From the NCBI GenBank assembly GCA_964106645.2, contig CAXKZF020000136.1: DNA of 53,303 nt, one strand, 5' to 3'. Within the stretch, counting starts at the first letter, position 1, and every line of letters begins with the position of its first letter. The position numbers and the translations under genes were made by a program. This DNA is from Podarcis pityusensis (Eukaryota). Below the pieces are notes generated by a model. That model was given only the letters and a program-made list of their open reading frames with translations. It made no database searches and was not told the origin of the DNA. Below, piece after piece: positions 1 through 53,303 of this stretch.

Positions 1-351
1 GTTCCAGCCTGTAGCCGCCGAGGCTAAACGGTGCCGTCCCTTCTCGAGGACGTGAATCTAGAGACCTACTCGGATTGAGTCCTGTCACACTCAGGTCAAG
101 GTGTCGCTGGTAACTGCGCTGGCGTTACACCCCCGCAGCTCTGCTGTCGCACGCAGGTTCCTGTGCACGCCGACACGACGGCGCTAACCACGTGGAAGCC
201 CGTCGCACCAAGGGCTCTAAAGAGTGCCTGCCAGACCCGGAGGCGAAAAACTGGGTAGCGTGACCTAAGGGTCGCGTGGGGTGTCACCGTAACCGGGACA
301 CTAACAGATCGTGGATGTGAGCTCTGCTCCGTCCACGATCTTCCCTTTTTT
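1..351 (+). ncRNA. 3' part of the large structured RNA (duplicate of 48907-49257)
   Basis: Overlap copy. Confidence 0.65.
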
Positions 352-458
352 GAGGGGCTTATGCAGCCTTCGGGCCGAACTACTGCGTCAAACCCGAAAC
401 ACTTTTCGCCAGGTGTTGCAGCCGCGATTCTCAGACTTTCTTGTAATAAAAGGCGAAG

Positions 459-1001
459 TTAATCGGTCGCCCCACCAAACTGCTTGTTCTGACGCGTCTT
501 TTTTAGAAACTTCTCGAGTCGGGCCTGAAACACTTCAGGTTTACGCCGCATCTCCTCGATATAACTGATACGGACGCGCTTATACATTTCAGAAAAGGCT
601 TCAAAATGAGCCCAGGTTTCGGGGTTGGCTTGTAGTGCGCTCAAAATGTCTGCCGCGATGTAATCGTCTTCGAGCGAGAGGTCAGGTAGCGTCGCACGTC
701 CCGCCTCGGTCATCTTGCCTTCGTCGATCAGACGGCGGGCACGTATCTTATTTAGTTCGGTCCAGTGGCTGCGCTTACGCCTCGGCGTGTACCGCTTGAC
801 TAAATGGGTGGGGTTGATGCGTTTGCCAAAACCATCGATCCAACCAAAACATAGCGCCTCCTCAACGGCCTCGAGGTACGACACATTAAGCTGCTCTTTG
901 TCCGTCACCAACCAGATTTCGGTTTTTTTGTCGTGATGCTCAAAGAGCCACCGACGCCACGCGGCGCGGTCGGGGGCGTGAAACGTTTCAGTAATGTCCA
1001 T
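459..1001 (-). CDS. YdeI/OmpD-associated family protein
   Basis: WRRWL..H, EAVEEALCFGWIDG, YTPRRKRSHW and C-terminal OmdA-like motifs. Confidence 0.9.
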   Translation of the reverse strand: MDITETFHAPDRAAWRRWLFEHHDKKTEIWLVTDKEQLNVSYLEAVEEALCFGWIDGFGKRINPTHLVKRYTPRRKRSHWTELNKIRARRLIDEGKMTEAGRATLPDLSLEDDYIAADILSALQANPETWAHFEAFSEMYKRVRISYIEEMRRKPEVFQARLEKFLKKTRQNKQFGGATD

Positions 1002-1195
1002 CTTCTACCTCTTGAGGCGTCATACATGCATCAACTTTGCCACTAATTTTAGCGTGCGCAACATGCAAGTTTGATAGATAAAAAGAGAGCGATAGACTTC
1101 AGAGCTTTCGGACGTTTCAGGTGTCCGAGCCCCAAGTCGAAATAACTTGACAACACCCGTTGGCCCAGGTCTACCGCTCCTGTTTGGTCAACGGC

Positions 1196-1633
1196 TCAGG
1201 CGTCGGCCCGAACTTCCAGAATCCAGGTCACGCCGAACTGATCTCTAAGCATTCCGTAGAGCGGCGAGCCCCACGCCGAAGGACCCACGTCCACCGTGAC
1301 GGTTGCGCCGTCCTTGAGCCCGTCCCAGTAGGCCGTCATCTCGTCGGTCGAGTCGCCGTTAAGTGCGACAAAGAGCGCCTTGTCGCCTTGATCGTACGAC
1401 ATGGCAGCCGGGACGTCGTAGCCCATCACATGAAAACCTTTGTCGCTCATAACCTGGCCCCACATGATCTCGTCGGCTTCGTCTTCGGTCGCCATACCGC
1501 CCTCGCTCTGCATGTTGTGTCCGTCCTTATAGGTGAGGAGGGTGATCTCGCCGCCGAAGACGGACTGGTAGAACTCGAGCGCGGTGCGGGCGGTGTGACG
1601 GTAGTTGAGGTGAGTCGTGGTCGTGATAGCCAT
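1196..1633 (-). CDS. VOC/glyoxalase family protein (PhnB-like)
   Basis: ALEFYQSVFGG...WGSPLYGMLRDQFGVTW. Confidence 0.9.
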   Translation of the reverse strand: MAITTTTHLNYRHTARTALEFYQSVFGGEITLLTYKDGHNMQSEGGMATEDEADEIMWGQVMSDKGFHVMGYDVPAAMSYDQGDKALFVALNGDSTDEMTAYWDGLKDGATVTVDVGPSAWGSPLYGMLRDQFGVTWILEVRADA

Positions 1634-2036
1634 TGATGTCTCCTTTATAAATAGGGTGTAGGTAGGGGTACCTTCGGAAGATTTTACGGTTACCGCTGTA
1701 GCCTCCAGCTTGACCTCGTTTTGGGTCTTCTAAAGTCTACGGGCGAGTGTAGGTCAGGGTCAGTCTTGAGTTTGTGTCTTACTTTGCCGTGTTAGAGCTC
1801 GAGACAAGTTCACCCTAGCTGAGGCAAGCCTGTAAGTGGCTACTGAACTCCGGGTGGTCTTGCAGCTGATGTCCTCAGCTTTTCAACAGCTCAATGACCA
1901 TCTCTGTTACACACCGTTTTATGCAGTGGTTGAGCGCGTTGTCTGCATATCCCTATGAGGTGCCACTCATAGATCGTGCCCGTCAAGCTTCGCTCCGTTT
2001 GGGATCTGTCATTTGTACATAGTCACATCGAAACAA

Positions 2037-2058
2037 AAGGGCGAAGCGCTTCGCCCTT
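2037..2058. promoter_or_regulatory. Perfect 22-bp palindrome upstream of the Xre-RES operon (possible operator or hairpin)
   Basis: AAGGGCGAAGC|GCTTCGCCCTT. Confidence 0.45.
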
Positions 2059-2109
2059 ATTTTGTCAATCATTCATCAATAACTCGTCAATTTATTGTAA
2101 AGTAAAGCG

Positions 2110-2481
2110 ATGAGAAGCACTGCGTCCAATCTGATGTTCGGCGTGCCTACCGTTCATGACGAGACGGGCGACATACAAGTGGCTGAACTCGCCAGCCTCT
2201 TCGAGGTCAGCCAGGCACAGCTTGCCCGCATGTCGGGCGTCAGTCGTCAGCTGCTGCACCAGTCTCCTCGCTCAGTCAAGGTGCAGCGTGCCCTGAGACG
2301 ACTGGAGTACCTCTTCGCCCGCACACGTAACTTGACAGGCTCACCCATCAACGCTCGCATCTGGCTCAAGATGGGCCATCCCGACCTCGAGGGCGTCGCA
2401 CCTATTGAGCTGCTCGAAGAGGGACATACCGAGGCCATCGAGGACTTCCTGCTCGCCATCGAGACCGGCTCGCCCCGTTGA
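2110..2481 (+). CDS. Xre/MbcA/ParS-type antitoxin
   Basis: N-terminal HTH plus ARIWL...HPDLEGVAPIELL motif; overlaps the RES gene start. Confidence 0.85.
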   Translation: MRSTASNLMFGVPTVHDETGDIQVAELASLFEVSQAQLARMSGVSRQLLHQSPRSVKVQRALRRLEYLFARTRNLTGSPINARIWLKMGHPDLEGVAPIELLEEGHTEAIEDFLLAIETGSPR

Positions 2482-3033
2482 GCGAACGCCTGGAGCGTCT
2501 CAGCTCGCTCGAGCCCAACGCCCTCGCTGGAACAGCTTTTCGCGCAGTCAACCTGCGTTACCTCGAGACACCACTCTCCGCCGTCGGTCGATCCTGACGG
2601 GCGGGCGCTACAACCCCAAGGGGGCGTTCGAGGTGCTCTACCTGGCTGAGAACCCCATGACCACCCTGCTCGAGGTGCAGTTCGCCGCCAGCAGCGGCGG
2701 GCGCTTCGTGGCTGAGCCCAAAGATCCCTATGTCGTCTTCAGCGTCGCATTTACGCTTCAACACCTAGTCAACCTGCACGATCCCCATAACCTTTCGGAG
2801 CTTGGTCTCTCCCCTGCCGACCTGCAACAGCCTTAGCGCTTGAAGCAGGCACGTGGTGAAAGGGTCCTCACGCACGAGTTAGGTCGGGCACTCTTTGAAC
2901 GTGGGTATGAAGGCCTCAACTACCCCTCGGCCACAGACGGTACGGCGAACCTTGCGGTCTTCCCGACAACTTGAAGCCTGGGAGCCTACTTCAGATCACT
3001 TGGGAAGGCCGTACCCTCGCGAAGGTGCCTTAG
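2478..3033 (+). pseudogene. RES-domain toxin with in-frame amber codon
   Basis: R...GGRYNP...LYLAE...E...YPS..NLAVF motifs; TAG at 2834-2836 in both copies; extra indels in copy 1. Confidence 0.8.
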
Positions 3034-3089
3034 CAACGCATGTCCAAAGAGATACCAGAGCCCTATGTATATAGGGTACGGTGATCGCT

Positions 3090-3285
3090 CTACTTCGCGG
3101 CAAACGTAAGCGCAGCAGCGATGTCCTCAGCTTCCAGGTACGGGTAGTCCCCCTAGGATCTCCTCCTGGCTCGCTCCGGCAGCCAGCAGGTCGAGGATGT
3201 CCTTCACCCGGACTCTTAGACCACGGATGCAAGGTTTCCGCCGCACTGGTCCGGATTCCACAGTGATGCGCTCTAGCTGACTCAT
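3090..3285 (-). pseudogene. Orphan DUF433 antitoxin (frameshifted)
   Basis: RITVNPDQCGG/KPCIRGLRVRVKDILDLLAAG..DYPYLEAEDIAAAL; one base missing at GGAAACC in both copies. Confidence 0.75.
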
Positions 3286-3402
3286 GACCTCACTCCTCAC
3301 GGACCAGTCTGCTCGCTTGATCAATAACAAACCCTAAGGTGTACCCCCGTACCACATCGCGTGCATCCCGTATTTTTTCATGTGCTCGCTGTATCGTCAG
3401 GC

Positions 3403-4116
3403 ATGCGCCTGCACAGCCATTTCGTCGCTCTGTTTGCCCTACTGACCGCCATTGCTACAGCTCAGCAACCCCCACAGCTTGATCCATCCCGAGCCTCGGT
3501 GAACCCTAGAGCCGACGAGATCAGAACGACCGCTTGTACCGTCGAGGAAACGGACGATGACGATGAGCCCAGCAGCCGCGACCTGCCCTCACGCCAGACC
3601 CCCGAATGGCAAGCCGAGTACGCCCGCAGGCAAGCCTACAGCACGCTCTTCCCAGAGTTCCTGGCAGTCGTGCCCCTCGAGCGGGATGACGAGGTGCTCA
3701 TGCCGGTCGAGGGCGTCACCATGAGCCAGGTGGCAGACACCTGGGGTGCAGCTAGAAGCGAAGGCCGGTCGCACGAAGGTACCGACATCTTCGCTGCTGA
3801 GGGCACCCCGATTTATTCCGCCACGACCGGGTACGTGCAGCGCATCGGCTCTAACCCGGTCGGCGGCAACATCGTGACCGTCATCGGTGGAGGCAGTGTG
3901 CGTTATTACTACGCCCATCTCTCGGGCTTCTCCGAGGCGCTCGAGGAGGGGCAGTACGTGACGCCCGAAACGCTCCTGGGCTACGTGGGCAACACCGGCA
4001 ACGCCATAACCACCCCGCCGCACCTGCATTTCGGCGTTTACGCTGGTGAGTCGTACCTGACGTGCGACTGGGACGCCGAGAACCCTTACTCCCTCATCGT
4101 CGATAGAGTCTGGTGA
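3403..4116 (+). CDS. Secreted M23 family metallopeptidase
   Basis: Signal peptide; HEGTDIFA, YYYAHL, PPHLHFG motifs (start could be 3361). Confidence 0.92.
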   Translation: MRLHSHFVALFALLTAIATAQQPPQLDPSRASVNPRADEIRTTACTVEETDDDDEPSSRDLPSRQTPEWQAEYARRQAYSTLFPEFLAVVPLERDDEVLMPVEGVTMSQVADTWGAARSEGRSHEGTDIFAAEGTPIYSATTGYVQRIGSNPVGGNIVTVIGGGSVRYYYAHLSGFSEALEEGQYVTPETLLGYVGNTGNAITTPPHLHFGVYAGESYLTCDWDAENPYSLIVDRVW

Positions 4117-4159
4117 AGAACGTCATACCTGTGACGGCTGAAGTCGTTGCTGGCAGGCT

Positions 4160-4880
4160 TTACTCAGCCAGGGTGCGCCCGAAGAAGCTGACCATCTGGT
4201 CGTAAGCGTCGTTTGCCGCGAAGGTTTCCTGCAGCTCACCGTCTACCAGGAAGCTGTGTGGCTCGCCCTGGTAGACGCTTAGCTCGAAAAACTTGCCCGC
4301 CTCGTCGAGCACCGTCGCGTACTCGTAGATGTCGGCAATCGGGCTCGCTTCGTCGGCCGTCCCGTGGAAGATGAGCATGGGCGCGTCGAGCTGCGAAACG
4401 ATCGCCTCGTCGATGGGCCGGTCTCCCTCATCACCCCGGTTGGGAAAGCCATACCAGGCTACGCCCGCCGCGAACTCGGTGATGGTCGGCAGGTAGTACA
4501 TGGTGTAATAACCGCCAATGCAAAAGCCCGTCAGGCCGATGCGCTCGGGGTCCACGTCGCCACGCTCACCCAGAAAAGCCAAGCTATCGCGCAGGAGGGC
4601 GTCCATAACCTCCAGGGGCGGTTCCTCCTCGTAGGTTTGCCACTCGAGCGCCAGCGTTACAAAGCCATCCGCGGCTAGCTTGTCGGCGACCTCTTCGTAG
4701 CCGGGTTGTTGCCCTCTGATCGAGTGCAAGAGGACAACGGCGGGCTTCTGACCTTCGCCATCGGGCACCGTCAGGTAGGCGGGGTAGCTCTGCTCCTGGC
4801 TGGTGACTTCGACACGTTCGGCGCTCTGGGCGAACACAAGACCAAAAGACAAAACGACCAAACGATAGTAAAACGCGCAT
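4160..4880 (-). CDS. Dienelactone hydrolase family protein (signal-peptide region probably frameshifted)
   Basis: GFCIGG nucleophile elbow, HGTAD, GEPHSF; RBS+ATG at 4880 is out of frame with ORF 4160-4861. Confidence 0.85.
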
Positions 4881-5469: not shown

Positions 5470-6177
5470 ATGTATATCGATCTGTTCGACCAAACCGAAA
5501 CCGTTCGTCTCACTAGGCTTTGCCACGACCTGCAAACCGATAAGGTACTCACCGCAGGGCAGGTGTGGGAGCGCTATAGACTCAGTCCGCGTGTCCTTCG
5601 AGAGGCCGGCTTCACCCTTTCCTGGGAACGCTGGAAAGCGACACCCGATAAGGTCAAAGACCACGCGGTTACCTGCATCACGCTCGAGCCCAGATCACCA
5701 GGCTCTAAGGCAGGATGCTCGCGCCGCGACACGGGTCTCGCAGAGATTCGTTACCTGTTACGTGAACCCTCGAGTTCCTGGAAGTCACCCGAATCATCTG
5801 GGTCTAAGGCCAGGGCCTTGCCCGACATCATCTGCGACAAGCGTCCTGACAACCCGGAAGTCTTTGCCGTGGTGTACGTACTTGGCAAGTCAGGTATAGA
5901 TGACCTTCGCCGCCGGGCACTTGCCCTCGAAGGTAGTTTTCCCACCATCCTTTGGGGCGTTGTGTCCAAGACTAACCGAGAAAAGCTCGAGGGTTGCCTT
6001 TCTGGGCTCGAAACCTCCACCAAGCATCTAGTCCTGGACGCCCCCTACGCCCCTGAACTGGCTAATCCCTACCGCTACGCGTACCCCTGCGATGATCCCA
6101 CAACGCGGGCCATCATTAGGCAAAATCCTGGTCCCCGCTGGCACTGGCTTCAGAGCAGTGACGGCCAAAATTCGTGA
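5470..6177 (+). CDS. Hypothetical protein, possibly a degenerate replication-relaxation / PD-(D/E)XK-like protein
   Basis: GLAEIRYLL...W...PDII...FAVVY...LWG spacing recalls Deinococcota Replic_Relax-like proteins; expected acidic residues appear replaced. Confidence 0.4.
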   Translation: MYIDLFDQTETVRLTRLCHDLQTDKVLTAGQVWERYRLSPRVLREAGFTLSWERWKATPDKVKDHAVTCITLEPRSPGSKAGCSRRDTGLAEIRYLLREPSSSWKSPESSGSKARALPDIICDKRPDNPEVFAVVYVLGKSGIDDLRRRALALEGSFPTILWGVVSKTNREKLEGCLSGLETSTKHLVLDAPYAPELANPYRYAYPCDDPTTRAIIRQNPGPRWHWLQSSDGQNS

Positions 6178-40011: not shown

Positions 40012-40057
40012 CTCCTGGATGAGCTGTTGTGCCTAGGCACAACAGCTCATCCAGGAG
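40012..40057. repeat. Perfect 46-bp palindrome
   Basis: CTCCTGGATGAGCTGTTGTGCCT|AGGCACAACAGCTCATCCAGGAG. Confidence 0.95.
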
Positions 40058-46070: not shown

Positions 46071-46290
46071 ACTCCTTCGTCACTTCTTTCCAGCCGATTC
46101 TACCTTAAATATTAAGGTGTTTCAACACACTTAGGTCTCACAAGTTCACTTACCTAACCCGGTAACAAGATGGTGCATCACCTCACCTGGGGCTTTACTG
46201 CATAAACACAGAAGCCCAATGGCGACGTGCAACCACCCTTTGAACGGCAAAGATCTTCATAGCGCAGCCTGTGATGTATATAATGTAGGC

Positions 46291-46575
46291 ATGATCCGGA
46301 AACAGCTCTATCTTGAAGAAGCTCAGGACCAGGCGCTCAAAGTGCGAGCCAAGGAATTAGGTATCTCTGAGGCTGAGATCGTCAGGCGGGCGCTTGACGC
46401 AGCCTTACATCCTAAAGGCAGCGCCCAACTCATCGCGCCCCGTAGGGCAGCACTCACCCGGCTCGTCCGTAACGCCAAACGCCTCTCCGAAGACCATCAC
46501 TTTCCTGAGGGCTACCGCTTCAAGCGCGAGGAACTCTACGACGAGCGAGAGGACCGCTGGCCCAAACGCTCCTGA
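46291..46575 (+). CDS. CopG/RHH antitoxin
   Basis: MIRKQLYLEEAQDQALKVRAKELGISEAEIVRRALD. Confidence 0.88.
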   Translation: MIRKQLYLEEAQDQALKVRAKELGISEAEIVRRALDAALHPKGSAQLIAPRRAALTRLVRNAKRLSEDHHFPEGYRFKREELYDEREDRWPKRS

Positions 46576-47018
46576 TGCCCACCTATCTGCTCGACACGAA
46601 TCTCCTGCTCTATGCTCACGACCAACACAAACTTCACAAGCAAGGACGTGCCCTCGAGTTGCTCGAACGCCTAGGAGATGGCCTCAGTGCTGCGCTCAGC
46701 ACCCAGAACTTGGCCGAATTCGCCAACGTCGCCCTGAAGCGGCTCAAGCCACCCCTCTCTCCTGCTGAGGTCACCGAACAGTTGGAGTTACTCGAGCAGA
46801 CCTTCGTCGTCTACCCGTTGACTGCTGCGGTCGTCCGGGAAGCTGTTCGTGGTGTCGGAGTGCATAGTCTGTCTTACTACGATGCACAGGTCTGGGCGGT
46901 GGCGAAACTCAACCAGATCCCGGTTGTCCTGAGCGAAGACTTCAATACAGGCGCGACGCTCGAGGGAGTGCTATTTCTAAACCCACTCGAGCCAAGCTTC
47001 GACCTCGCTACGTTGTAA
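46575..47018 (+). CDS. vapC: PIN-domain toxin
   Basis: LLDTNLLLYA, QNLAEF, SYYDAQVWA, LSEDF. Confidence 0.92.
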   Translation: MPTYLLDTNLLLYAHDQHKLHKQGRALELLERLGDGLSAALSTQNLAEFANVALKRLKPPLSPAEVTEQLELLEQTFVVYPLTAAVVREAVRGVGVHSLSYYDAQVWAVAKLNQIPVVLSEDFNTGATLEGVLFLNPLEPSFDLATL

Positions 47019-47094: not shown

Positions 47095-47799
47095 TTAATC
47101 CCGAGACCCATGCTTAGCGTCCCCGAGGTACTGTCCCAACGTCATCGGCGGGTCGTCATGAAACACCACGGGCCGCATCACCGGGTACGACTCAGGCCAG
47201 TTCGGCTGCCGCTGAAAAAAGTGAAGCCTAGGTGCTGCCCGCGATTCCCCCCAGGCATGCTGCGCCCGCCGCACGAGATCCTTGATGTCCTCTCTTACTC
47301 CGTTGAACATCGGCATCTTCGAGAGGCCCTCGAGCAGCACATTCATCTGCACTGTGTTCCGTGACTTTGCGGCAGCCAGCAACCGCGCCTCGTACTCCTG
47401 CCGGTATTGCCGCCTGAGCTTCCAGGTCCAGCGCTTGTAACGGTTCTCCGTCAGAACGTAATGCCGGAAGGTCAACCGCGTCTGGTTCACCCTCGCGTCC
47501 ACCAATGCCTCACCCTGGATAGGCGCACTCGAGAACAGCAACCAGTGCATCAAGTGGGTATCCTCGAGGCTCGGGTGGACTACCAGGAAGGTCGCTGGGA
47601 ACCCCGCTTTGCGCAGTACATGACGCTCCTGATCGTTCAGCAGGACATGGTACCGAGCGTGCATTTTATCTACAAATGCTGCAATCTTATTCAGCGGCAG
47701 CTGACCCTGAACATACAGCGGACACTTCTGCACCCGCCGCTGCACCGACTGCATCATTGCCGCCTGAGACCGAAAAAGCGGATAATCAAGACCCACCAT
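47095..47799 (-). CDS. Basic hypothetical protein divergent from the large RNA
   Basis: 234-aa Arg/Lys-rich ORF; minus-strand TAGAAT (47809-47814) just before the ATG. Confidence 0.75.
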   Translation of the reverse strand: MVGLDYPLFRSQAAMMQSVQRRVQKCPLYVQGQLPLNKIAAFVDKMHARYHVLLNDQERHVLRKAGFPATFLVVHPSLEDTHLMHWLLFSSAPIQGEALVDARVNQTRLTFRHYVLTENRYKRWTWKLRRQYRQEYEARLLAAAKSRNTVQMNVLLEGLSKMPMFNGVREDIKDLVRRAQHAWGESRAAPRLHFFQRQPNWPESYPVMRPVVFHDDPPMTLGQYLGDAKHGSRD

Positions 47800-47849
47800 G
47801 ATTGCGTTATTCTAGCAAAGCATATTAAAGCCGTATTATAGAATGTTCC

Positions 47850-49257
47850 TCTGCACGAGCTTTTTGTACGCTGTCGATAACCAGTCTGTGGGCGGTGGGT
47901 GGGAGCCTCGAGTTCGTACGTGATGCTTGGTATATCCCGCATAAGGGCGTAAAGTTCCAGGCAGGTGAGTCCACATCACTTACCGAATGAACCTGAGACT
48001 AGCCATCTCAGGAAGCCACGCTGGAGCTGCGTGCCTTCACAAATGGGGGCTGGCGCGGCTGCACCAGGGGCTGCGAGGGGAAGTGCCTCGCTTCTACCTA
48101 ATCTTCACCTGAAGGTTGGGCGACACGGACACGGGTACCAGGTGACCTGGGATGCCCTGCCGTACCAGAACACCGCAGGGGCAGCTCTCGGGGCTTCGCA
48201 AGAGTTGAACCTGCGCCCGACAGGTGGGCTGGCATGCACGACCGCGAGGCGTGCGCGTGAACGATGCGGACCCGGGTGGTCCCCAGGACGCAGACGTTCA
48301 CCGGTACTCCCCGGGGCAACCTGAGGAGATCGCTGGATAGCTCAAGCCGCACCCCAGGCGGCTGTCGGGTCTGCACAACCTTCGGGTTGTGGCGAGCACG
48401 TGCCCTTAAGGCCTACTTCTTGTGAGGGGGTAGGCGTCGGGCCTAGAGGATGAGGCGCTGGTAATCCGGGAGTTCGGAACATTTGCCCGGGGAGAAGCTG
48501 CAACGCGAGACCACAACGGTCAGGCGTCCTCATCCTGGGAAAGGGCGGGCGACTCGTTCACCAACAGTGACAGGGTCAGTACGGCTAACGTGGGAAGCTC
48601 TCCCCAAAACCATCAGGGCTGGGAGAGTGGGAGACTGAGCCAGTAGACGTCAAGGGTGCCGCGAGCGACCGTAAGGTCTAAACCGAACGCGAGCGACACA
48701 CCGAAGCCCGCAAGGGGTCAAGTCGAAAGCTCAGGGCGTGACATTTTCGGCTGCGATGTGGACTAGCCTCGCCGGACGCGAGGACACCAACCGTCACGTA
48801 TGGAAGTGCGTGAACGCGTGACCTGGAGAGATGCCTGGCAGCATCCCGAAAGGTCGCATCACCAGAGACGAACGAGTCTGGTCGCCCGTTTGTCTCGCGC
48901 GTGAACGTTCCAGCCTGTAGCCGCCGAGGCTAAACGGTGCCGTCCCTTCTCGAGGACGTGAATCTAGAGACCTACTCGGATTGAGTCCTGTCACACTCAG
49001 GTCAAGGTGTCGCTGGTAACTGCGCTGGCGTTACACCCCCGCAGCTCTGCTGTCGCACGCAGGTTCCTGTGCACGCCGACACGACGGCGCTAACCACGTG
49101 GAAGCCCGTCGCACCAAGGGCTCTAAAGAGTGCCTGCCAGACCCGGAGGCGAAAAACTGGGTAGCGTGACCTAAGGGTCGCGTGGGGTGTCACCGTAACC
49201 GGGACACTAACAGATCGTGGATGTGAGCTCTGCTCCGTCCACGATCTTCCCTTTTTT
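47850..49257 (+). ncRNA. Large structured RNA; candidate circularly permuted (CP) group II ribozyme with D5-D6 at the 5' end
   Basis: No credible ORF. D5-like hairpin 48024-48061 with AGC triad and 2-nt bulge; D6-like hairpin 48066-48099 with bulged A48096, ending CUACCUAAU; UUCG/GNRA tetraloops, G-U pairs that work only on +, long-range helices; terminal hairpin plus U-tract. Confidence 0.75.
49212..49257 (+). terminator. Intrinsic terminator-like hairpin ending the large RNA (duplicate at 306-351)
   Basis: AGATCGTGGATG...CGTCCACGATCT stem followed by TCCCTTTTTT. Confidence 0.6.
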
Positions 49258-49364
49258 GAGGGGCTTATGCAGCCTTCGGGCCGAACTACTGCGTCAAACC
49301 CGAAACACTTTTCGCCAGGTGTTGCAGCCGCGATTCTCAGACTTTCTTGTAATAAAAGGCGAAG

Positions 49365-49907
49365 TTAATCGGTCGCCCCACCAAACTGCTTGTTCTGACG
49401 CGTCTTTTTTAGAAACTTCTCGAGTCGGGCCTGAAACACTTCAGGTTTACGCCGCATCTCCTCGATATAACTGATACGGACGCGCTTATACATTTCAGAA
49501 AAGGCTTCAAAATGAGCCCAGGTTTCGGGGTTGGCTTGTAGTGCGCTCAAAATGTCTGCCGCGATGTAATCGTCTTCGAGCGAGAGGTCAGGTAGCGTCG
49601 CACGTCCCGCCTCGGTCATCTTGCCTTCGTCGATCAGACGGCGGGCACGTATCTTATTTAGTTCGGTCCAGTGGCTGCGCTTACGCCTCGGCGTGTACCG
49701 CTTGACTAAATGGGTGGGGTTGATGCGTTTGCCAAAACCATCGATCCAACCAAAACATAGCGCCTCCTCAACGGCCTCGAGGTACGACACATTAAGCTGC
49801 TCTTTGTCCGTCACCAACCAGATTTCGGTTTTTTTGTCGTGATGCTCAAAGAGCCACCGACGCCACGCGGCGCGGTCGGGGGCGTGAAACGTTTCAGTAA
49901 TGTCCAT
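49365..49907 (-). CDS. YdeI/OmpD-associated protein (overlap duplicate)
   Basis: Identical to 459-1001. Confidence 0.85.
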   Translation of the reverse strand: MDITETFHAPDRAAWRRWLFEHHDKKTEIWLVTDKEQLNVSYLEAVEEALCFGWIDGFGKRINPTHLVKRYTPRRKRSHWTELNKIRARRLIDEGKMTEAGRATLPDLSLEDDYIAADILSALQANPETWAHFEAFSEMYKRVRISYIEEMRRKPEVFQARLEKFLKKTRQNKQFGGATD

Positions 49908-50101
49908 CTTCTACCTCTTGAGGCGTCATACATGCATCAACTTTGCCACTAATTTTAGCGTGCGCAACATGCAAGTTTGATAGATAAAAAGAGAGCGATA
50001 GACTTCAGAGCTTTCGGACGTTTCAGGTGTCCGAGCCCCAAGTCGAAATAACTTGACAACACCCGTTGGCCCAGGTCTACCGCTCCTGTTTGGTCAACGG
50101 C

Positions 50102-50539
50102 TCAGGCGTCGGCCCGAACTTCCAGAATCCAGGTCACGCCGAACTGATCTCTAAGCATTCCGTAGAGCGGCGAGCCCCACGCCGAAGGACCCACGTCCAC
50201 CGTGACGGTTGCGCCGTCCTTGAGCCCGTCCCAGTAGGCCGTCATCTCGTCGGTCGAGTCGCCGTTAAGTGCGACAAAGAGCGCCTTGTCGCCTTGATCG
50301 TACGACATGGCAGCCGGGACGTCGTAGCCCATCACATGAAAACCTTTGTCGCTCATAACCTGGCCCCACATGATCTCGTCGGCTTCGTCTTCGGTCGCCA
50401 TACCGCCCTCGCTCTGCATGTTGTGTCCGTCCTTATAGGTGAGGAGGGTGATCTCGCCGCCGAAGACGGACTGGTAGAACTCGAGCGCGGTGCGGGCGGT
50501 GTGACGGTAGTTGAGGTGAGTCGTGGTCGTGATAGCCAT
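50102..50539 (-). CDS. VOC family protein (overlap duplicate)
   Basis: Identical to 1196-1633. Confidence 0.85.
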   Translation of the reverse strand: MAITTTTHLNYRHTARTALEFYQSVFGGEITLLTYKDGHNMQSEGGMATEDEADEIMWGQVMSDKGFHVMGYDVPAAMSYDQGDKALFVALNGDSTDEMTAYWDGLKDGATVTVDVGPSAWGSPLYGMLRDQFGVTWILEVRADA

Positions 50540-51015
50540 TGATGTCTCCTTTATAAATAGGGTGTAGGTAGGGGTACCTTCGGAAGATTTTACGGTTACC
50601 GCTGTAGCCTCCAGCTTGACCTCGTTTTGGGTCTTCTAAAGTCTACGGGCGAGTGTAGGTCAGGGTCAGTCTTGAGTTTGTGTCTTACTTTGCCGTGTTA
50701 GAGCTCGAGACAAGTTCACCCTAGCTGAGGCAAGCCTGTAAGTGGCTACTGAACTCCGGGTGGTCTTGCAGCTGATGTCCTCAGCTTTTCAACAGCTCAA
50801 TGACCATCTCTGTTACACACCGTTTTATGCAGTGGTTGAGCGCGTTGTCTGCATATCCCTATGAGGTGCCACTCATAGATCGTGCCCGTCAAGCTTCGCT
50901 CCGTTTGGGATCTGTCATTTGTACATAGTCACATCGAAACAAAAGGGCGAAGCGCTTCGCCCTTATTTTGTCAATCATTCATCAATAACTCGTCAATTTA
51001 TTGTAAAGTAAAGCG

Positions 51016-51387
51016 ATGAGAAGCACTGCGTCCAATCTGATGTTCGGCGTGCCTACCGTTCATGACGAGACGGGCGACATACAAGTGGCTGAACTCGCCA
51101 GCCTCTTCGAGGTCAGCCAGGCACAGCTTGCCCGCATGTCGGGCGTCAGTCGTCAGCTGCTGCACCAGTCTCCTCGCTCAGTCAAGGTGCAGCGTGCCCT
51201 GAGACGACTGGAGTACCTCTTCGCCCGCACACGTAACTTGACAGGCTCACCCATCAACGCTCGCATCTGGCTCAAGATGGGCCATCCCGACCTCGAGGGC
51301 GTCGCACCTATTGAGCTGCTCGAAGAGGGACATACCGAGGCCATCGAGGACTTCCTGCTCGCCATCGAGACCGGCTCGCCCCGTTGA
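51016..51387 (+). CDS. Xre/MbcA antitoxin (overlap duplicate)
   Basis: Identical to 2110-2481. Confidence 0.85.
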   Translation: MRSTASNLMFGVPTVHDETGDIQVAELASLFEVSQAQLARMSGVSRQLLHQSPRSVKVQRALRRLEYLFARTRNLTGSPINARIWLKMGHPDLEGVAPIELLEEGHTEAIEDFLLAIETGSPR

Positions 51388-51941
51388 GCGAACGCCTGGA
51401 GCGTCTCAGCTCGCTCGAGCCCAACGCCCTCGCTGGAACAGCTTTTCGCGCAGTCAACCTGCGTTACCTCGAGACACCACTCTCCGCCGTCGGGTCGATC
51501 CTGACGGGCGGGCGCTACAACCCCAAGGGGGCGTTCGAGGTGCTCTACCTGGCTGAGAACCCCATGACCACCCTGCTCGAGGTGCAGTTCGCCGCCAGCA
51601 GCGGCGGGCGCTTCGTGGCTGAGCCCAAAGATCCCTATGTCGTCTTCAGCGTCGCATTTACGCTTCAACACCTAGTCAACCTGCACGATCCCCATAACCT
51701 TTCGGAGCTTGGTCTCTCCCCTGCCGACCTGCAACAGCCTTAGCGCTTGAAGCAGGCACGTGGTGAAAGGGTCCTCACGCACGAGTTAGGTCGGGCACTC
51801 TTTGAACGTGGGTATGAAGGCCTCAACTACCCCTCGGCCACAGACGGTACGGCGAACCTTGCGGTCTTCCCCGACAACTTGAAGCCTGGGAGCCTACTTC
51901 AGATCACTTGGGAAGGCCGTACCCTCGCGAAGGTGCCTTAG
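51384..51941 (+). pseudogene. RES toxin with one in-frame TAG (overlap duplicate, cleaner copy)
   Basis: ORFs 51384-51743 and 51747-51941 are in the same frame. Confidence 0.8.
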
Positions 51942-52308
51942 CAACGCATGTCCAAAGAGATACCAGAGCCCTATGTATATAGGGTACGGTGATCGCTCTA
52001 CTTCGCGGCAAACGTAAGCGCAGCAGCGATGTCCTCAGCTTCCAGGTACGGGTAGTCCCCTAGGATCTCCTCCTGGCTCGCTCCGGCAGCCAGCAGGTCG
52101 AGGATGTCCTTCACCCGGACTCTTAGACCACGGATGCAAGGTTTCCGCCGCACTGGTCCGGATTCACAGTGATGCGCTCTAGCTGACTCATGACCTCACT
52201 CCTCACGGACCAGTCTGCTCGCTTGATCAATAACAAACCCTAAGGTGTACCCCCGTACCACATCGCGTGCATCCCGTATTTTTTCATGTGCTCGCTGTAT
52301 CGTCAGGC

Positions 52309-53022
52309 ATGCGCCTGCACAGCCATTTCGTCGCTCTGTTTGCCCTACTGACCGCCATTGCTACAGCTCAGCAACCCCCACAGCTTGATCCATCCCGAGC
52401 CTCGGTGAACCCTAGAGCCGACGAGATCAGAACGACCGCTTGTACCGTCGAGGAAACGGACGATGACGATGAGCCCAGCAGCCGCGACCTGCCCTCACGC
52501 CAGACCCCCGAATGGCAAGCCGAGTACGCCCGCAGGCAAGCCTACAGCACGCTCTTCCCAGAGTTCCTGGCAGTCGTGCCCCTCGAGCGGGATGACGAGG
52601 TGCTCATGCCGGTCGAGGGCGTCACCATGAGCCAGGTGGCAGACACCTGGGGTGCAGCTAGAAGCGAAGGCCGGTCGCACGAAGGTACCGACATCTTCGC
52701 TGCTGAGGGCACCCCGATTTATTCCGCCACGACCGGGTACGTGCAGCGCATCGGCTCTAACCCGGTCGGCGGCAACATCGTGACCGTCATCGGTGGAGGC
52801 AGTGTGCGTTATTACTACGCCCATCTCTCGGGCTTCTCCGAGGCGCTCGAGGAGGGGCAGTACGTGACGCCCGAAACGCTCCTGGGCTACGTGGGCAACA
52901 CCGGCAACGCCATAACCACCCCGCCGCACCTGCATTTCGGCGTTTACGCTGGTGAGTCGTACCTGACGTGCGACTGGGACGCCGAGAACCCTTACTCCCT
53001 CATCGTCGATAGAGTCTGGTGA
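52309..53022 (+). CDS. M23 peptidase (overlap duplicate)
   Basis: Identical to the first copy. Confidence 0.85.
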   Translation: MRLHSHFVALFALLTAIATAQQPPQLDPSRASVNPRADEIRTTACTVEETDDDDEPSSRDLPSRQTPEWQAEYARRQAYSTLFPEFLAVVPLERDDEVLMPVEGVTMSQVADTWGAARSEGRSHEGTDIFAAEGTPIYSATTGYVQRIGSNPVGGNIVTVIGGGSVRYYYAHLSGFSEALEEGQYVTPETLLGYVGNTGNAITTPPHLHFGVYAGESYLTCDWDAENPYSLIVDRVW

Positions 53023-53303
53023 AGAACGTCATACCTGTGACGGCTGAAGTCGTTGCTGGCAGGCTTTACTCAGCCAGGGTGCGCCCGAAGAAGCTGACCA
53101 TCTGGTCGTAAGCGTCGTTTGCCGCGAAGGTTTCCTGCAGCTCACCGTCTACCAGGAAGCTGTGTGGCTCGCCCTGGTAGACGCTTAGCTCGAAAAACTT
53201 GCCCGCCTCGTCGAGCACCGTCGCGTACTCGTAGATGTCGGCAATCGGGCTCGCTTCGTCGGCCGTCCCGTGGAAGATGAGCATGGGCGCGTCGAGCTGC
53301 GAA

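What the first reader, a model, noticed from the sequence alone, without database searches (positions are those of the whole stretch)
48024..48102. Group II D5 and D6 look-alikes at the 5' end, with a non-canonical D5
Seen: GAGCUGCGU-GCCUUCA-CAAA-UGGGGGC-UG-GCGCGGCU has the same architecture as canonical D5 (GAGCCGUAU-GCGAU-GAAA-GUCGC-AC-GUACGGUU). It has an AGC triad at 48025-48027, an 8-bp lower stem, a 2-nt 3' bulge at 48051-48052, an upper stem and a tetraloop. A D6-like hairpin follows (GCGAGG/CCUCGC) with A48096 bulged next to a G-U pair, 7 nt from an AY end (CUACCUAAU, 48102). About 1.15 kb of structured RNA lies downstream, the reverse of normal domain order. Deviations from consensus: CAAA instead of GNRA, UG instead of AY bulge, G-C instead of G-U at the triad G, and a longer upper stem. 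Inference: a divergent active site, or a ribozyme repurposed as a scaffold.
Basis: partly seen in the sequence, partly recalled or inferred. Interest (0 to 1): 0.85.

Follow-up and report, generated by a model that had tools for sequence, protein, structure and literature searches.

The report
Circularly permuted group II ribozyme core
The two hairpins are the catalytic domains (D5 and D6) of a circularly permuted group II ribozyme, a bacterial RNA class described in 2021 that cuts out small RNA circles. This is a new, unusually long plasmid-borne member of a known class, not a new kind of ribozyme.

Summary
D5 is at 48025-48060: AGC triad, five pairs, UG bulge, 7-bp upper stem, CAAA loop. D6 is at 48067-48098 with bulged A48096 beside a G-U pair. 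AU ends at 48102.

Both hairpins covary. Across 14 distinct sequences, 18 of 25 pairs show compensatory changes and 96% of cells are paired.

[quoted passage not shown] 2021, PMC8637638):
- D5-D6 lie at the 5' end.
- The bulge is "UN".
- The splice-site motifs are NU and GGGCG.
- A divergent gene, acpG, often sits upstream.

Three results support membership:
- A covariance model built only from this RNA's relatives finds the published RNAs on Thermus pTT8 (E 2e-8) and Polaromonas pPNAP05 (E 1e-7).
- A second model (D2-D3) hits them downstream in the same order.
- The divergent 234-aa neighbour (47095-47799) is an AcpG homologue (E 1e-15).

Rfam has no model for the class. RF00029 also misses the pTT8 RNA, so "no CM hit" says nothing.

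This copy has four peculiarities: about 1.4 kb instead of about 900 nt, a predicted 15-nt circle, CAAA instead of GAAA, and a 10-nt deletion of a conserved D1 helix strand. Activity is untested. Earlier scan notes cover this same window only.

The parts
47095..47799 (-). acpG homologue: 234 aa, no Pfam domain, divergently transcribed from the RNA.
   Evidence: BLASTP against the 259-aa protein encoded divergently upstream of the published CP group II RNA on pTT8 gives E 1e-15 and 27% identity over the full length. tblastn finds homologues on 24 plasmids, 19 of them Thermus, 2 Deinococcus and one Polaromonas pPNAP05. There is no Pfam hit. It is kept next to the RNA in all relatives that reach that far.
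47802..47849 (.). Conserved intergenic block between acpG and the RNA. Presumed divergent promoter or operator region.
   Evidence: It is almost invariant in 8 relatives. Promoter function is inferred; the consensus scan did not call a sigma-70 site here.
47850..48024 (+). 5' leader, equivalent to the class-specific P1/P2 region. It includes a covarying hairpin at 47992-48012 with the conserved loop CUAGCCA.
   Evidence: Seven pairs are predicted, four of them with compensatory changes (columns 145-151 with 159-165). The assignment as P2 is by position relative to D5, as in the published alignment, and is inferred.
48025..48060 (+). Domain 5: AGC triad 48025-48027, five pairs, UG bulge 48051-48052, 7-bp upper stem, CAAA loop 48040-48043.
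   Evidence: Searches give the coordinates. 10 of 15 pairs covary across the class. Model R1 hits the published loci.
48067..48098 (+). Domain 6: basal helix with bulged A48096 (predicted branch point), CU/UU internal loop, 6-bp upper helix, 7-nt loop.
   Evidence: 8 of 10 pairs covary and the A is invariant in all 15 rows. This matches the published description of a bulged A plus an internal loop.
48101..48102 (+). AU, the predicted 3' splice-site dinucleotide (class consensus NU). The cut would follow U48102.
   Evidence: AAU or GAU is conserved in all rows that reach it. Placement is by homology to the mapped site in the C. testosteroni ribozyme. It was not tested.
48103..48117 (+). Linker between D6 and D1. 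This 15-nt segment would be released as an RNA circle.
   Evidence: It lies between the conserved NU and GGGCG motifs. The published range of predicted circles is 15-86 nt. Relatives have 15-19 nt, with variable sequence.
48118..48122 (+). GGGCG, the class-specific 5' splice-site motif and the start of D1.
   Evidence: It is invariant in the family and present in pTT8, T. aquaticus, Polaromonas and Deinococcus QL22. D. wulumuqiensis has GUGCG. The motif is named.
48118..48596 (+). Domain 1, with approximate boundaries. It contains the conserved strands CCCG-ACAGG-UGGGCUG (48216-48231), AUAGCUCAA (48337-48345) and GGCUGUCGGG (48360-48369). It also holds a hairpin at 48465-48491 whose invariant 15-nt loop is the candidate EBS1. 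In this copy 10 nt are missing between 48345 and 48346.
   Evidence: Many covarying helices are predicted. The same sequence blocks appear in the same order in the published alignment rows. The window is the only sequence with a gap at pairs 381-385 with 508-512.
48597..48634 (+). Short domain 2 hairpin (48597-48628), followed by the purine-only J2/3 segment GGGAGA (48629-48634).
   Evidence: The hairpin covaries. Model R2 aligns this segment to pTT8, Deinococcus QL22 and pPNAP05. A purine-rich J2/3 is a stated class feature.
48635..48734 (+). Domain 3, closed by CUGAGC with GCUCAG. An E-loop-like internal loop (CAGUA 48641-48645 opposite GAAA 48725-28) sits at its base.
   Evidence: Searches show the structure and coordinates. 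R2 hits pTT8 at 5230-5088, inside the published RNA (E 2e-4), and Deinococcus QL22 (E 4e-7). An E-loop at the base of D3 is a stated class feature.
48736..48799 (+). D4-like terminal hairpin (GCGUGAC with GUCACGU). The published class boundary ends about here.
   Evidence: Assigned by position after D3, as in the published consensus structure. The stem is conserved but does not covary. This is inferred.
48800..49211 (+). 3' extension beyond the published class boundary. It includes a nearly invariant block at about 48983-49130.
   Evidence: It is conserved in L002, L003, L010 and L011, replaced in L001 and partly deleted in L012. The fold z-score is only -1.3. There is no Rfam, plasmid or viral match.
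49212..49257 (+). Intrinsic-terminator-like hairpin followed by a U run. Presumed 3' end of the transcript.
   Evidence: The sequence is. The stem is conserved, with one compensatory change, in relatives. The simple scan missed it because the loop is long.

Best explanation
The hairpins at 48025-48060 and 48067-48098 are domains 5 and 6 of a circularly permuted (CP) group II ribozyme. The whole non-coding transcript runs from about 47850 to 49257 on the + strand and has the class's order: leader-D5-D6-linker-D1-D2-D3-D4.

The mechanism below is shown for other members of the class and inferred here.
- D5 supplies the metal-binding platform, formed by the AGC triad and the UG bulge.
- The 2'-OH of bulged A48096 attacks the phosphate before G48118 (5' splice site, GGGCG).
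- The freed 3'-OH of U48117 then attacks after U48102 (3' splice site).
- This releases the 15-nt linker 48103-48117 as a covalent circle and leaves a branched D5-D6/D1-D4 RNA.

The divergent upstream gene encodes AcpG, the protein of unknown function that often accompanies this RNA class. The locus sits on a circular conjugative-type plasmid of about 48.9 kb, whose closest protein matches are in Deinococcota.
For: Family and structure:
- Seven independent relatives keep the whole 1.4-kb RNA next to the same protein.
- 51 pairs in the 5' half and 26 in the 3' half show compensatory changes.

Homology of D5-D6 to published members:
- Model R1 was built only from this family (D5-D6-linker-5' splice site).
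- It finds the published CP group II RNAs on T. thermophilus pTT8 at 5911-5808 (40.8 bits, E 2e-8). The published RNA spans 5976-5075.
- It finds Polaromonas pPNAP05 at 128-268 (40.2 bits, E 1e-7). The published RNA spans 83-834.
- It also finds Deinococcus plasmids (87 and 69 bits) and three other Thermus plasmids, each time upstream of an AcpG homologue.

D5 and D6 across these loci:
- 96.3% of cells are paired and 18 of 25 pairs covary.
- The triad, the UN bulge, the bulged A, NU and GGGCG are conserved, as the paper describes.

Homology beyond D5-D6:
- Model R2 (D2, J2/3, D3) hits the same loci downstream in the same order.

Protein and coding content:
- AcpG homology gives E 1e-15, and plasmid homologues are mostly in Thermus.
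- No ORF with a Pfam domain lies inside the RNA.
Against: - No biochemical or read-level evidence of branching or circle formation exists for this locus. The one RNA-library contig that covers 47978-48128 is unspliced and could be DNA.
- This copy has CAAA where relatives have the GAAA tetraloop.
- It lacks 10 nt that form one strand of a conserved D1 helix.
- Its last linker bases pair less well with the candidate EBS1 loop than in relatives. It may therefore process poorly or not at all.
- The RNA is about 500 nt longer than the published average, and the extra 3' part is unexplained.
- I could not score the window with the paper's own alignment.
Confidence: 0.9

Rival explanations
1. By descent it is a CP group II RNA, but this copy no longer self-processes. 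It would be a decaying ribozyme, or one kept for another role such as an RNA scaffold for AcpG or a plasmid function.
For: - The 10-nt deletion between 48345 and 48346 removes the partner of ACAGG (48220-48224). All seven relatives keep this helix, and it is in the published consensus structure.
- The D5 loop is CAAA instead of GAAA in this copy and in L001.
- The linker ends in GGUU where most relatives have UGUU, opposite an unchanged AACA in the candidate EBS1 loop.
- The paper itself saw expression but no clear self-processing in vivo in Polaromonas.
Against: - All directly catalytic elements are intact: the triad, the bulge, the branch A, both splice-site motifs, J2/3 and the D3 E-loop.
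- The rest of the RNA is still under visible constraint.
- L001 shares CAAA and is otherwise intact, so CAAA alone is tolerated in evolution.
- The deletion could be recent, or an assembly error. The source run does hold all sampled words of the stretch.
Confidence: 0.3
2. An unrelated large non-coding RNA that happens to contain a D5-like hairpin.
For: No Rfam family, including RF00029 and the group II D1-D4 families, matches at any threshold tried. The local fold energy is not exceptional.
Against: - Rfam also fails on the published pTT8 RNA.
- Two independent covariance models link the RNA to published class members in the right order.
- The partner protein is homologous to AcpG.
Confidence: 0.02
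3. A remnant of an ordinary mobile group II intron, with D5-D6 left over and followed by unrelated sequence.
For: The locus is on a plasmid, where group II introns are common. An AGC triad and a bulged A are present.
Against: - There is no reverse-transcriptase ORF.
- There is no D1-D4 upstream.
- The downstream sequence is homologous to D1-D3 of the CP class.
- The arrangement is conserved with the same neighbour in seven relatives rather than scattered as a mobile element would be.
Confidence: 0.02

Closest known systems
CP group II ribozymes (formerly 'T-large' RNA). Sources: Roth, Weinberg, Vanderschuren, Murdock and Breaker 2021, PMC8637638; structures in PMC13717195.
   Same: - Domain order D5-D6-D1-D2-D3-D4.
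- D5 with an AGC triad, five pairs and a UN bulge.
- D6 with a bulged A and an internal loop.
- NU and GGGCG splice-site motifs around a short linker.
- Purine-rich J2/3 and an E-loop at the base of D3.
- No internal ORF, a plasmid location and a divergent acpG gene.
- Covariance-model homology to the pTT8 and pPNAP05 members.
   Different: - About 1.4 kb against an average of about 900 nt, mostly from a roughly 410-nt 3' extension and a longer 5' leader.
- The linker is 15 nt, the published minimum.
- The D5 loop is CAAA in this copy.
- 10 nt are deleted in a conserved D1 helix.
- AcpG is only 27-30% identical to Thermus and Deinococcus proteins.
- The published taxon list names Thermales, Firmicutes and Proteobacteria, not this lineage.
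Canonical bacterial group II introns (Rfam RF00029 for D5-D6).
   Same: - The same D5 geometry: triad, five pairs, a two-nucleotide 3' bulge, an upper helix and a tetraloop.
- The same D6 branch adenosine a few bases before the 3' splice site.
- The same two-step transesterification chemistry. For the CP class the chemistry is from the literature.
   Different: - The domain order is permuted.
- The bulge is UN rather than AY.
- The triad G pairs with C rather than U.
- The upper stem has 7 pairs rather than 4-5.
- The 5' splice-site motif is GGGCG rather than GUGYG.
- There is no intron-encoded protein and no mobility.
- The products are a circle plus a branched RNA rather than ligated exons plus a lariat.
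- RF00029 does not score it.

Membership tests
CP group II ribozyme | D5 and D6 lie 5' of D1-D4 in one transcript. | tested here: met
   The R1 hit is at 48013-48141. The D2-D3 segment at 48578-48745 is homologous, through R2, to pTT8 5230-5088, which lies 3' of the pTT8 D5 at 5911. The order is the same in Deinococcus QL22 and pPNAP05.
CP group II ribozyme | D5 has an AGC triad, five pairs, a two-nucleotide UN bulge on the 3' strand, and a terminal loop. | tested here: met
   Searches show it. 10 of 15 D5 pairs covary. The loop is CAAA here and GAAA in 6 of 8 family members.
CP group II ribozyme | D6 has a bulged adenosine and an internal loop. | tested here: met
   A48096 is invariant in 15 rows. 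8 of 10 D6 pairs covary, and the CU/UU internal loop is present.
CP group II ribozyme | A short linker (15-86 nt) is bounded by NU (3' splice site) and GGGCG (5' splice site). | tested here: met
   AU is at 48101-48102, GGGCG at 48118-48122 and the linker is 15 nt.
CP group II ribozyme | Sequence and structure homology to published members. | tested here: met
   R1 scores pTT8 at E 2e-8 and pPNAP05 at E 1e-7. R2 scores pTT8 at E 2e-4. E-values are rough because calibration was short. Scoring with the published alignment itself was not possible.
CP group II ribozyme | Purine-rich J2/3 and an E-loop at the base of D3. | tested here: met
   GGGAGA is at 48629-48634. CAGUA lies opposite GAAA, flanked by covarying helices. 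The same motifs are in the T. aquaticus row of the published alignment.
CP group II ribozyme | An EBS1 loop in D1 is complementary to the 3' end of the linker. | tested here: inconclusive
   The candidate is the invariant loop of hairpin 48465-48491, which contains AACA. It pairs with UGUU in most relatives, while Thermus has AACC with GGUU. The window and L001 have GGUU opposite AACA, which is a mismatch.
CP group II ribozyme | Class-specific pseudoknots: P1 loop with the 3' tail, P2 loop with the D2 loop, and D3 loop with D1. | tested here: inconclusive
   Only a 4-nt complementarity was seen, between the hairpin loop at 47992-48012 (AGCC) and the D2 loop (GGCU). No covariation test was done.
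CP group II ribozyme | No protein-coding ORF lies inside the RNA. | tested here: met
   Only short ORFs are present, none with a Pfam hit. Relatives differ by indels that are not multiples of three.
CP group II ribozyme | An acpG gene is nearby. This is frequent in the class but not obligatory. | tested here: met
   Searches show the homology. The gene is divergent and starts 50 nt from the presumed RNA start.
CP group II ribozyme | Self-processing into a branched RNA and a small circle. | not testable with these tools
   The available runs are held as contigs only. One unspliced RNA-library contig covers the linker.
Canonical group II intron | Domain order D1 to D6, with GUGYG at the 5' end. 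| tested here: not met
   D5-D6 come first, and the 5' splice-site motif is GGGCG.
Canonical group II intron | A match to Rfam RF00029 or the group-II-D1D4 models. | tested here: not met
   No hit was found at gathering score, nor at E up to 10 on 1.75 kb or on 111 nt. The published pTT8 CP RNA gives none either.
Canonical group II intron | An intron-encoded reverse transcriptase in D4. | tested here: not met
   Searches show no such ORF.

The most novel reading that the evidence does not exclude
This plasmid lineage may have turned the CP group II ribozyme into something larger. It carries a conserved 3' module of about 410 nt that is replaced or partly deleted in some relatives. The module's near-invariant 130-150-nt core also turns up with different flanks in other samples. 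The window's copy has lost a D1 helix strand and the D5 GNRA loop. Together these facts would fit an RNA whose main job, with AcpG, is no longer circle formation, or a new functional RNA module fused to the ribozyme.
Probability: 0.12. Interest if true: 0.6.

Novelty: new member of a known kind. Interest (0 to 1): 0.3.

Why it matters
It settles an apparently exotic 'non-canonical D5' as the standard catalytic core of a class that is known but still poorly catalogued.

- The class has no Rfam model, so automatic annotation misses it, as it did here.
- The locus adds a divergent lineage with an AcpG partner only about 27-30% identical to Thermus and Deinococcus proteins (27% to pTT8), and seven metagenomic relatives.
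- That gives fresh covariation data for D5, D6 and D1-D3.
- It provides natural variants that bear on open questions for the class: a minimal 15-nt circle, a CAAA D5 loop, a missing D1 helix strand and a 3' extension.
- Those questions are what the circles are for, what AcpG does, and why these RNAs live on plasmids.
- It also flags a bacterial plasmid contig inside what the scan's other notes describe as a reptile genome assembly.

Tried and rejected
Searches that gave nothing useful:
- Rfam at gathering score on the whole window, and at E up to 10 on 1.75 kb and on 111 nt, found no relevant hit. The control on pTT8 shows why.
- blastn of the RNA against plasmid and phage collections found only a 45-nt chance match in Azotobacter.
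- The search for related loci with the neighbour protein in species-representative genomes found nothing.
- A 21-nt pattern from the most conserved loop gave only chance matches in genome contigs.
- The same pattern gave one true relative in metagenome contigs, already held as L009.
- The 3' block found nothing in viral contigs or plasmids.

Structural readings I rejected:
- RNAalifold proposed a helix enclosing D5 (AGCC with GGCU, columns 167-170 with 223-226 of A2). Three of its four pairs break in L003, and it competes with the D6 basal helix, which covaries across the class.
- RNAalifold also proposed pairing CCUAAU with GUUGGG across the linker. This is not conserved in pTT8.
- GUGCG at about 48250 and GUGAA at about 48257 were considered as 5' splice sites. 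Neither is conserved in relatives. The class motif GGGCG at 48118 is conserved.

Other points:
- I could not load the paper's Stockholm alignment into a model, because long sequences may not be typed into calls. That step was left out.
Full report
**What is in the sequence.**
The window is a circular replicon of about 48.9 kb read past its start. Bases 1-4397 repeat 48907-53303 at 99.9% identity. It encodes:
- a type IV coupling protein
- an ArdC-like protein
- an RHH/PIN pair
- an integrase
- a transposase

The coupling protein's best plasmid matches are Deinococcus and Allomeiothermus, at only about 33% identity. This is therefore a conjugative-type bacterial plasmid, probably from Deinococcota or a neighbour. 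Notes on other pieces of the same assembly describe lizard retroelements, so the contig is probably a bacterial passenger in a reptile assembly.

Between a 234-aa ORF on the minus strand (47095-47799) and a 180-aa ORF (49365-49907) lie about 1.4 kb with no credible ORF.
- The stretch is GC- and purine-rich on the plus strand.
- It ends in a hairpin plus U run at 49212-49257.
- The plus strand folds better than the minus strand (z -3.6 against -1.8 for the first kilobase).

**The observation.**
- D5-like hairpin: 48025-48060. It has AGC at 48025-48027, an 8-bp lower stem, UG at 48051-48052, a 7-bp upper stem and a CAAA loop.
- D6-like hairpin: 48067-48098. A48096 is bulged next to the G48069-U48095 pair, and a CU/UU internal loop sits below the GCGAGG/CCUCGC helix.
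- AU at 48101-48102.

The local folding energy is unremarkable (z -1.7). The case therefore rests on comparison.

**Relatives.**
The neighbouring protein has 12 homologues at 60-92% identity in metagenomes. Their contigs carry a gene-free gap of about 1.5 kb on the same side. That gap aligns with the window's RNA over its whole length at 69-86% identity.

The distinct relatives are:
- L001
- L002
- L003 (the same as L004 and L005)
- L008 (the same as L009 and L021)
- L010
- L011
- L012

RNAalifold predicts 208 pairs in the 5' 710 nt, 51 of them with compensatory changes. It predicts 223 pairs in the 3' part, 26 with compensatory changes.

Public runs also hold related copies at 85-99% identity in an air metagenome, in another organism's run with many variants, and in two RNA libraries. 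This is a real, conserved, structured RNA gene.

**Identification.**
A note on this window by the first-stage reader suggested a 'circularly permuted group II ribozyme'. I tested that against the paper that defines the class (PMC8637638).

The paper describes the following:
- RNAs of about 900 nt on chromosomes and plasmids, first seen in Thermus.
- Domain order D5-D6-D1-D2-D3-D4.
- A D5 whose AGC triad lies five pairs from a 'UN bulge'.
- A D6 with a bulged A and an internal loop.
- A linker of 15-86 nt, bounded by NU and GGGCG, that is released as a circle.
- A divergent upstream ORF of about 260 aa with no known homology, named AcpG. The type example is TTHC007 on T. thermophilus HB8 plasmid pTT8.

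I fetched pTT8.
- Its 259-aa ORF at 6164-6943 matches the window's 234-aa protein over the full length (E 1e-15, 27% identity).
- tblastn finds homologues on 24 plasmids: 19 Thermus, 2 Deinococcus and one Polaromonas pPNAP05, which is also in the paper.
- The D5 of the pTT8 RNA is nearly the same as the window's. It has the same lower stem apart from one U-G to C-G change, the same UG bulge and a 7-bp upper stem, and its loop is GAAA.

**Statistical tests of RNA homology.**
Model R1 was built only from the eight family sequences over D5-D6-linker-5' splice site, with my hand-drawn structure.

| Target | Position | Bits | E-value |
|---|---|---|---|
| Deinococcus sp. QL22 plasmid | 2599-2731 (-) of locus L026 | 87 | 3e-19 |
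| D. wulumuqiensis pDrdVI | 285-421 (-) of locus L027 | 69 | 1e-14 |
| pTT8 | 5911-5808 | 40.8 | 2e-8 alone, 8e-8 in the larger search |
| pPNAP05 | 128-268 | 40.2 | 1e-7 |
| T. aquaticus, T. oshimai, T. brockianus plasmids | - | about 34 | - |

The pTT8 hit lies inside the published 5976-5075, and the pPNAP05 hit inside the published 83-834. In every locus fetched around an AcpG match, the hit lies upstream of that gene. The window has a single hit, at 48013-48141.

On the resulting 15-row alignment:
- The 25 pairs are 96.3% paired.
- 18 pairs have compensatory changes: 10 of 15 in D5 and 8 of 10 in D6.
- No shuffle of 500 reaches the observed values.
- Sliding the partners drops pairing to 41-47%.
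- The alignment is model-fitted, which inflates pairing somewhat. The compensatory changes across genera are plain in the rows.

Model R2, from the family's D2, J2/3 and D3 segment, hits:
- Deinococcus QL22 (E 4e-7)
- pTT8 at 5230-5088 (E 2e-4)
- pPNAP05 at 673-842 (E 0.02)

Each hit lies downstream of that locus's D5-D6 hit. Rows of the published alignment that I could read show the same conserved blocks in the same order as the window:
- GGUU-GGGCGAC
- GAUAGCU...GUAAC
- CGGAAC
- CUAACG-GGGAA
- GGGAGAC...CAGUA
- GAAAGC

**Why the suggested Rfam test is uninformative.**
RF00029 and the D1-D4 families give nothing on the window at any setting. They also give nothing on the bona fide pTT8 RNA. 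Rfam 15 has no model that recognises this class.

**Domain map (inferred by homology and covariation).**

| Element | Coordinates | Note |
|---|---|---|
| Leader | 47850-48024 | Covarying hairpin at 47992-48012 |
| D5 | 48025-48060 | |
| D6 | 48067-48098 | |
| 3' splice site | after U48102 | |
| Linker (predicted circle) | 48103-48117 | 15 nt, the published minimum |
| 5' splice site | 48118-48122 | GGGCG |
| D1 | to about 48596 | |
| D2 | 48597-48628 | |
| J2/3 | 48629-48634 | GGGAGA |
| D3 | 48635-48734 | E-loop-like CAGUA/GAAA at its base |
| D4-like hairpin | 48736-48799 | |
| 3' extension | about 48800-49211 | About 410 nt, not within the published class boundary |
| Terminator | 49212-49257 | |

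Its end does not fit the conserved GGGCG motif.

**What is unusual in this copy.**
1. The D5 loop is CAAA here and in L001. It is GAAA in the six other family members and in pTT8. In group II introns the D5 tetraloop docks on D1, and the paper predicts the same for this class. The change may therefore weaken docking. This is inference.
2. Ten nucleotides present in all seven relatives, and matched in Thermus, are missing between 48345 and 48346.
   - They supply the strand that pairs with ACAGG at 48220-48224. The window is the only gapped sequence at five pairs.
   - The published consensus structure shows a five-pair helix just before the corresponding hairpin; I matched it by eye, so this is tentative.
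   - The source run holds all sampled words of the stretch, so the deletion is probably real.
3. The linker ends in GGUU opposite AACA in the candidate EBS1 loop, where most relatives have UGUU.
4. The RNA is about 500 nt longer than the class average.

None of these touches the triad, the bulge, the branch A or the splice-site motifs. I rate loss of self-processing in this copy at about 0.3.

**The 3' extension.**
- It is conserved in L002, L003, L010 and L011.
- It has an almost invariant block at about 48983-49130, even in L003, which is 69% identical elsewhere.
- It is replaced by other sequence in L001 and partly deleted in L012.
- Contigs in other runs match this block and then diverge on both sides.
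- Its fold energy is not exceptional (z -1.3).
- It has no match in Rfam, plasmids or viral contigs.
- Indels that are not multiples of three argue against coding.
- Its role is unknown.

**Verdict.**
It is wrong to treat the features as a divergent active site, because they are the norm of a known, active class. This is a new member of that class from an unsampled lineage, with some copy-specific lesions and an unexplained 3' extension. Interest is modest.

Noticed in passing
window 1-4397 and 48907-53303: The window overlaps itself. The two ends are 99.9% identical, with two compensating small indels near 2587 and 3250. The replicon is therefore a circle of about 48.9 kb whose assembly ends were not trimmed. 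Notes on other pieces of the same assembly describe lizard retroelements, so this is probably a bacterial plasmid contig inside a reptile assembly.
   Followed up: partly
window 48800-49211, core about 48983-49130: A 3' extension lies beyond the published boundary of CP group II RNAs. Its near-invariant core is kept even in the most divergent relative, replaced in L001 and partly deleted in L012. It is found with different flanks in contigs of other runs. There is no match in Rfam, plasmids or viral contigs.
   Followed up: partly
window 48345/48346: A 10-nt deletion relative to all seven relatives removes one strand of a conserved five-pair D1 helix. Its partner is ACAGG at 48220-48224.
   Followed up: partly
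window about 48903 (alignment A5 columns 405-432): The window and L001 lack a 28-nt hairpin (CCCC...GGGG) that L002, L003, L010, L011 and L012 carry in the 3' part.
   Followed up: no
L006:1-1200: One AcpG homologue (76% identity) has no detectable CP group II RNA upstream. A 377-aa ORF running to the contig end sits there instead, and model R1 finds nothing. [quoted passage not shown]
   Followed up: partly
L026:2599-2731 and L027:285-421: The Deinococcus sp. QL22 plasmid copy has a CGC triad with a G-U wobble at the triad G, as in group IIC introns. The D. wulumuqiensis copy has GUGCG, the canonical group II motif, at the 5' splice site instead of GGGCG. The genus Deinococcus is not in the published taxon list that I could search.
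   Followed up: partly
window 47978-48128: A 155-nt contig from a small RNA-seq library of another organism (run X24) covers the leader hairpin, D5, D6, the linker and the first bases of D1 at 96% identity. It is unspliced and could be precursor RNA or DNA carry-over.
   Followed up: no
window 46219-47018: An RHH antitoxin and PIN toxin pair lies next to acpG. A PIN gene also lies beside acpG in L001 and within a few kb of it in L002, and PemK-type pairs sit there in L007, L010 and L011.
   Followed up: no
window 40012-40057: A perfect 46-nt palindrome lies just upstream of the ArdC-like gene region. It is a possible transfer or replication origin element.
   Followed up: no
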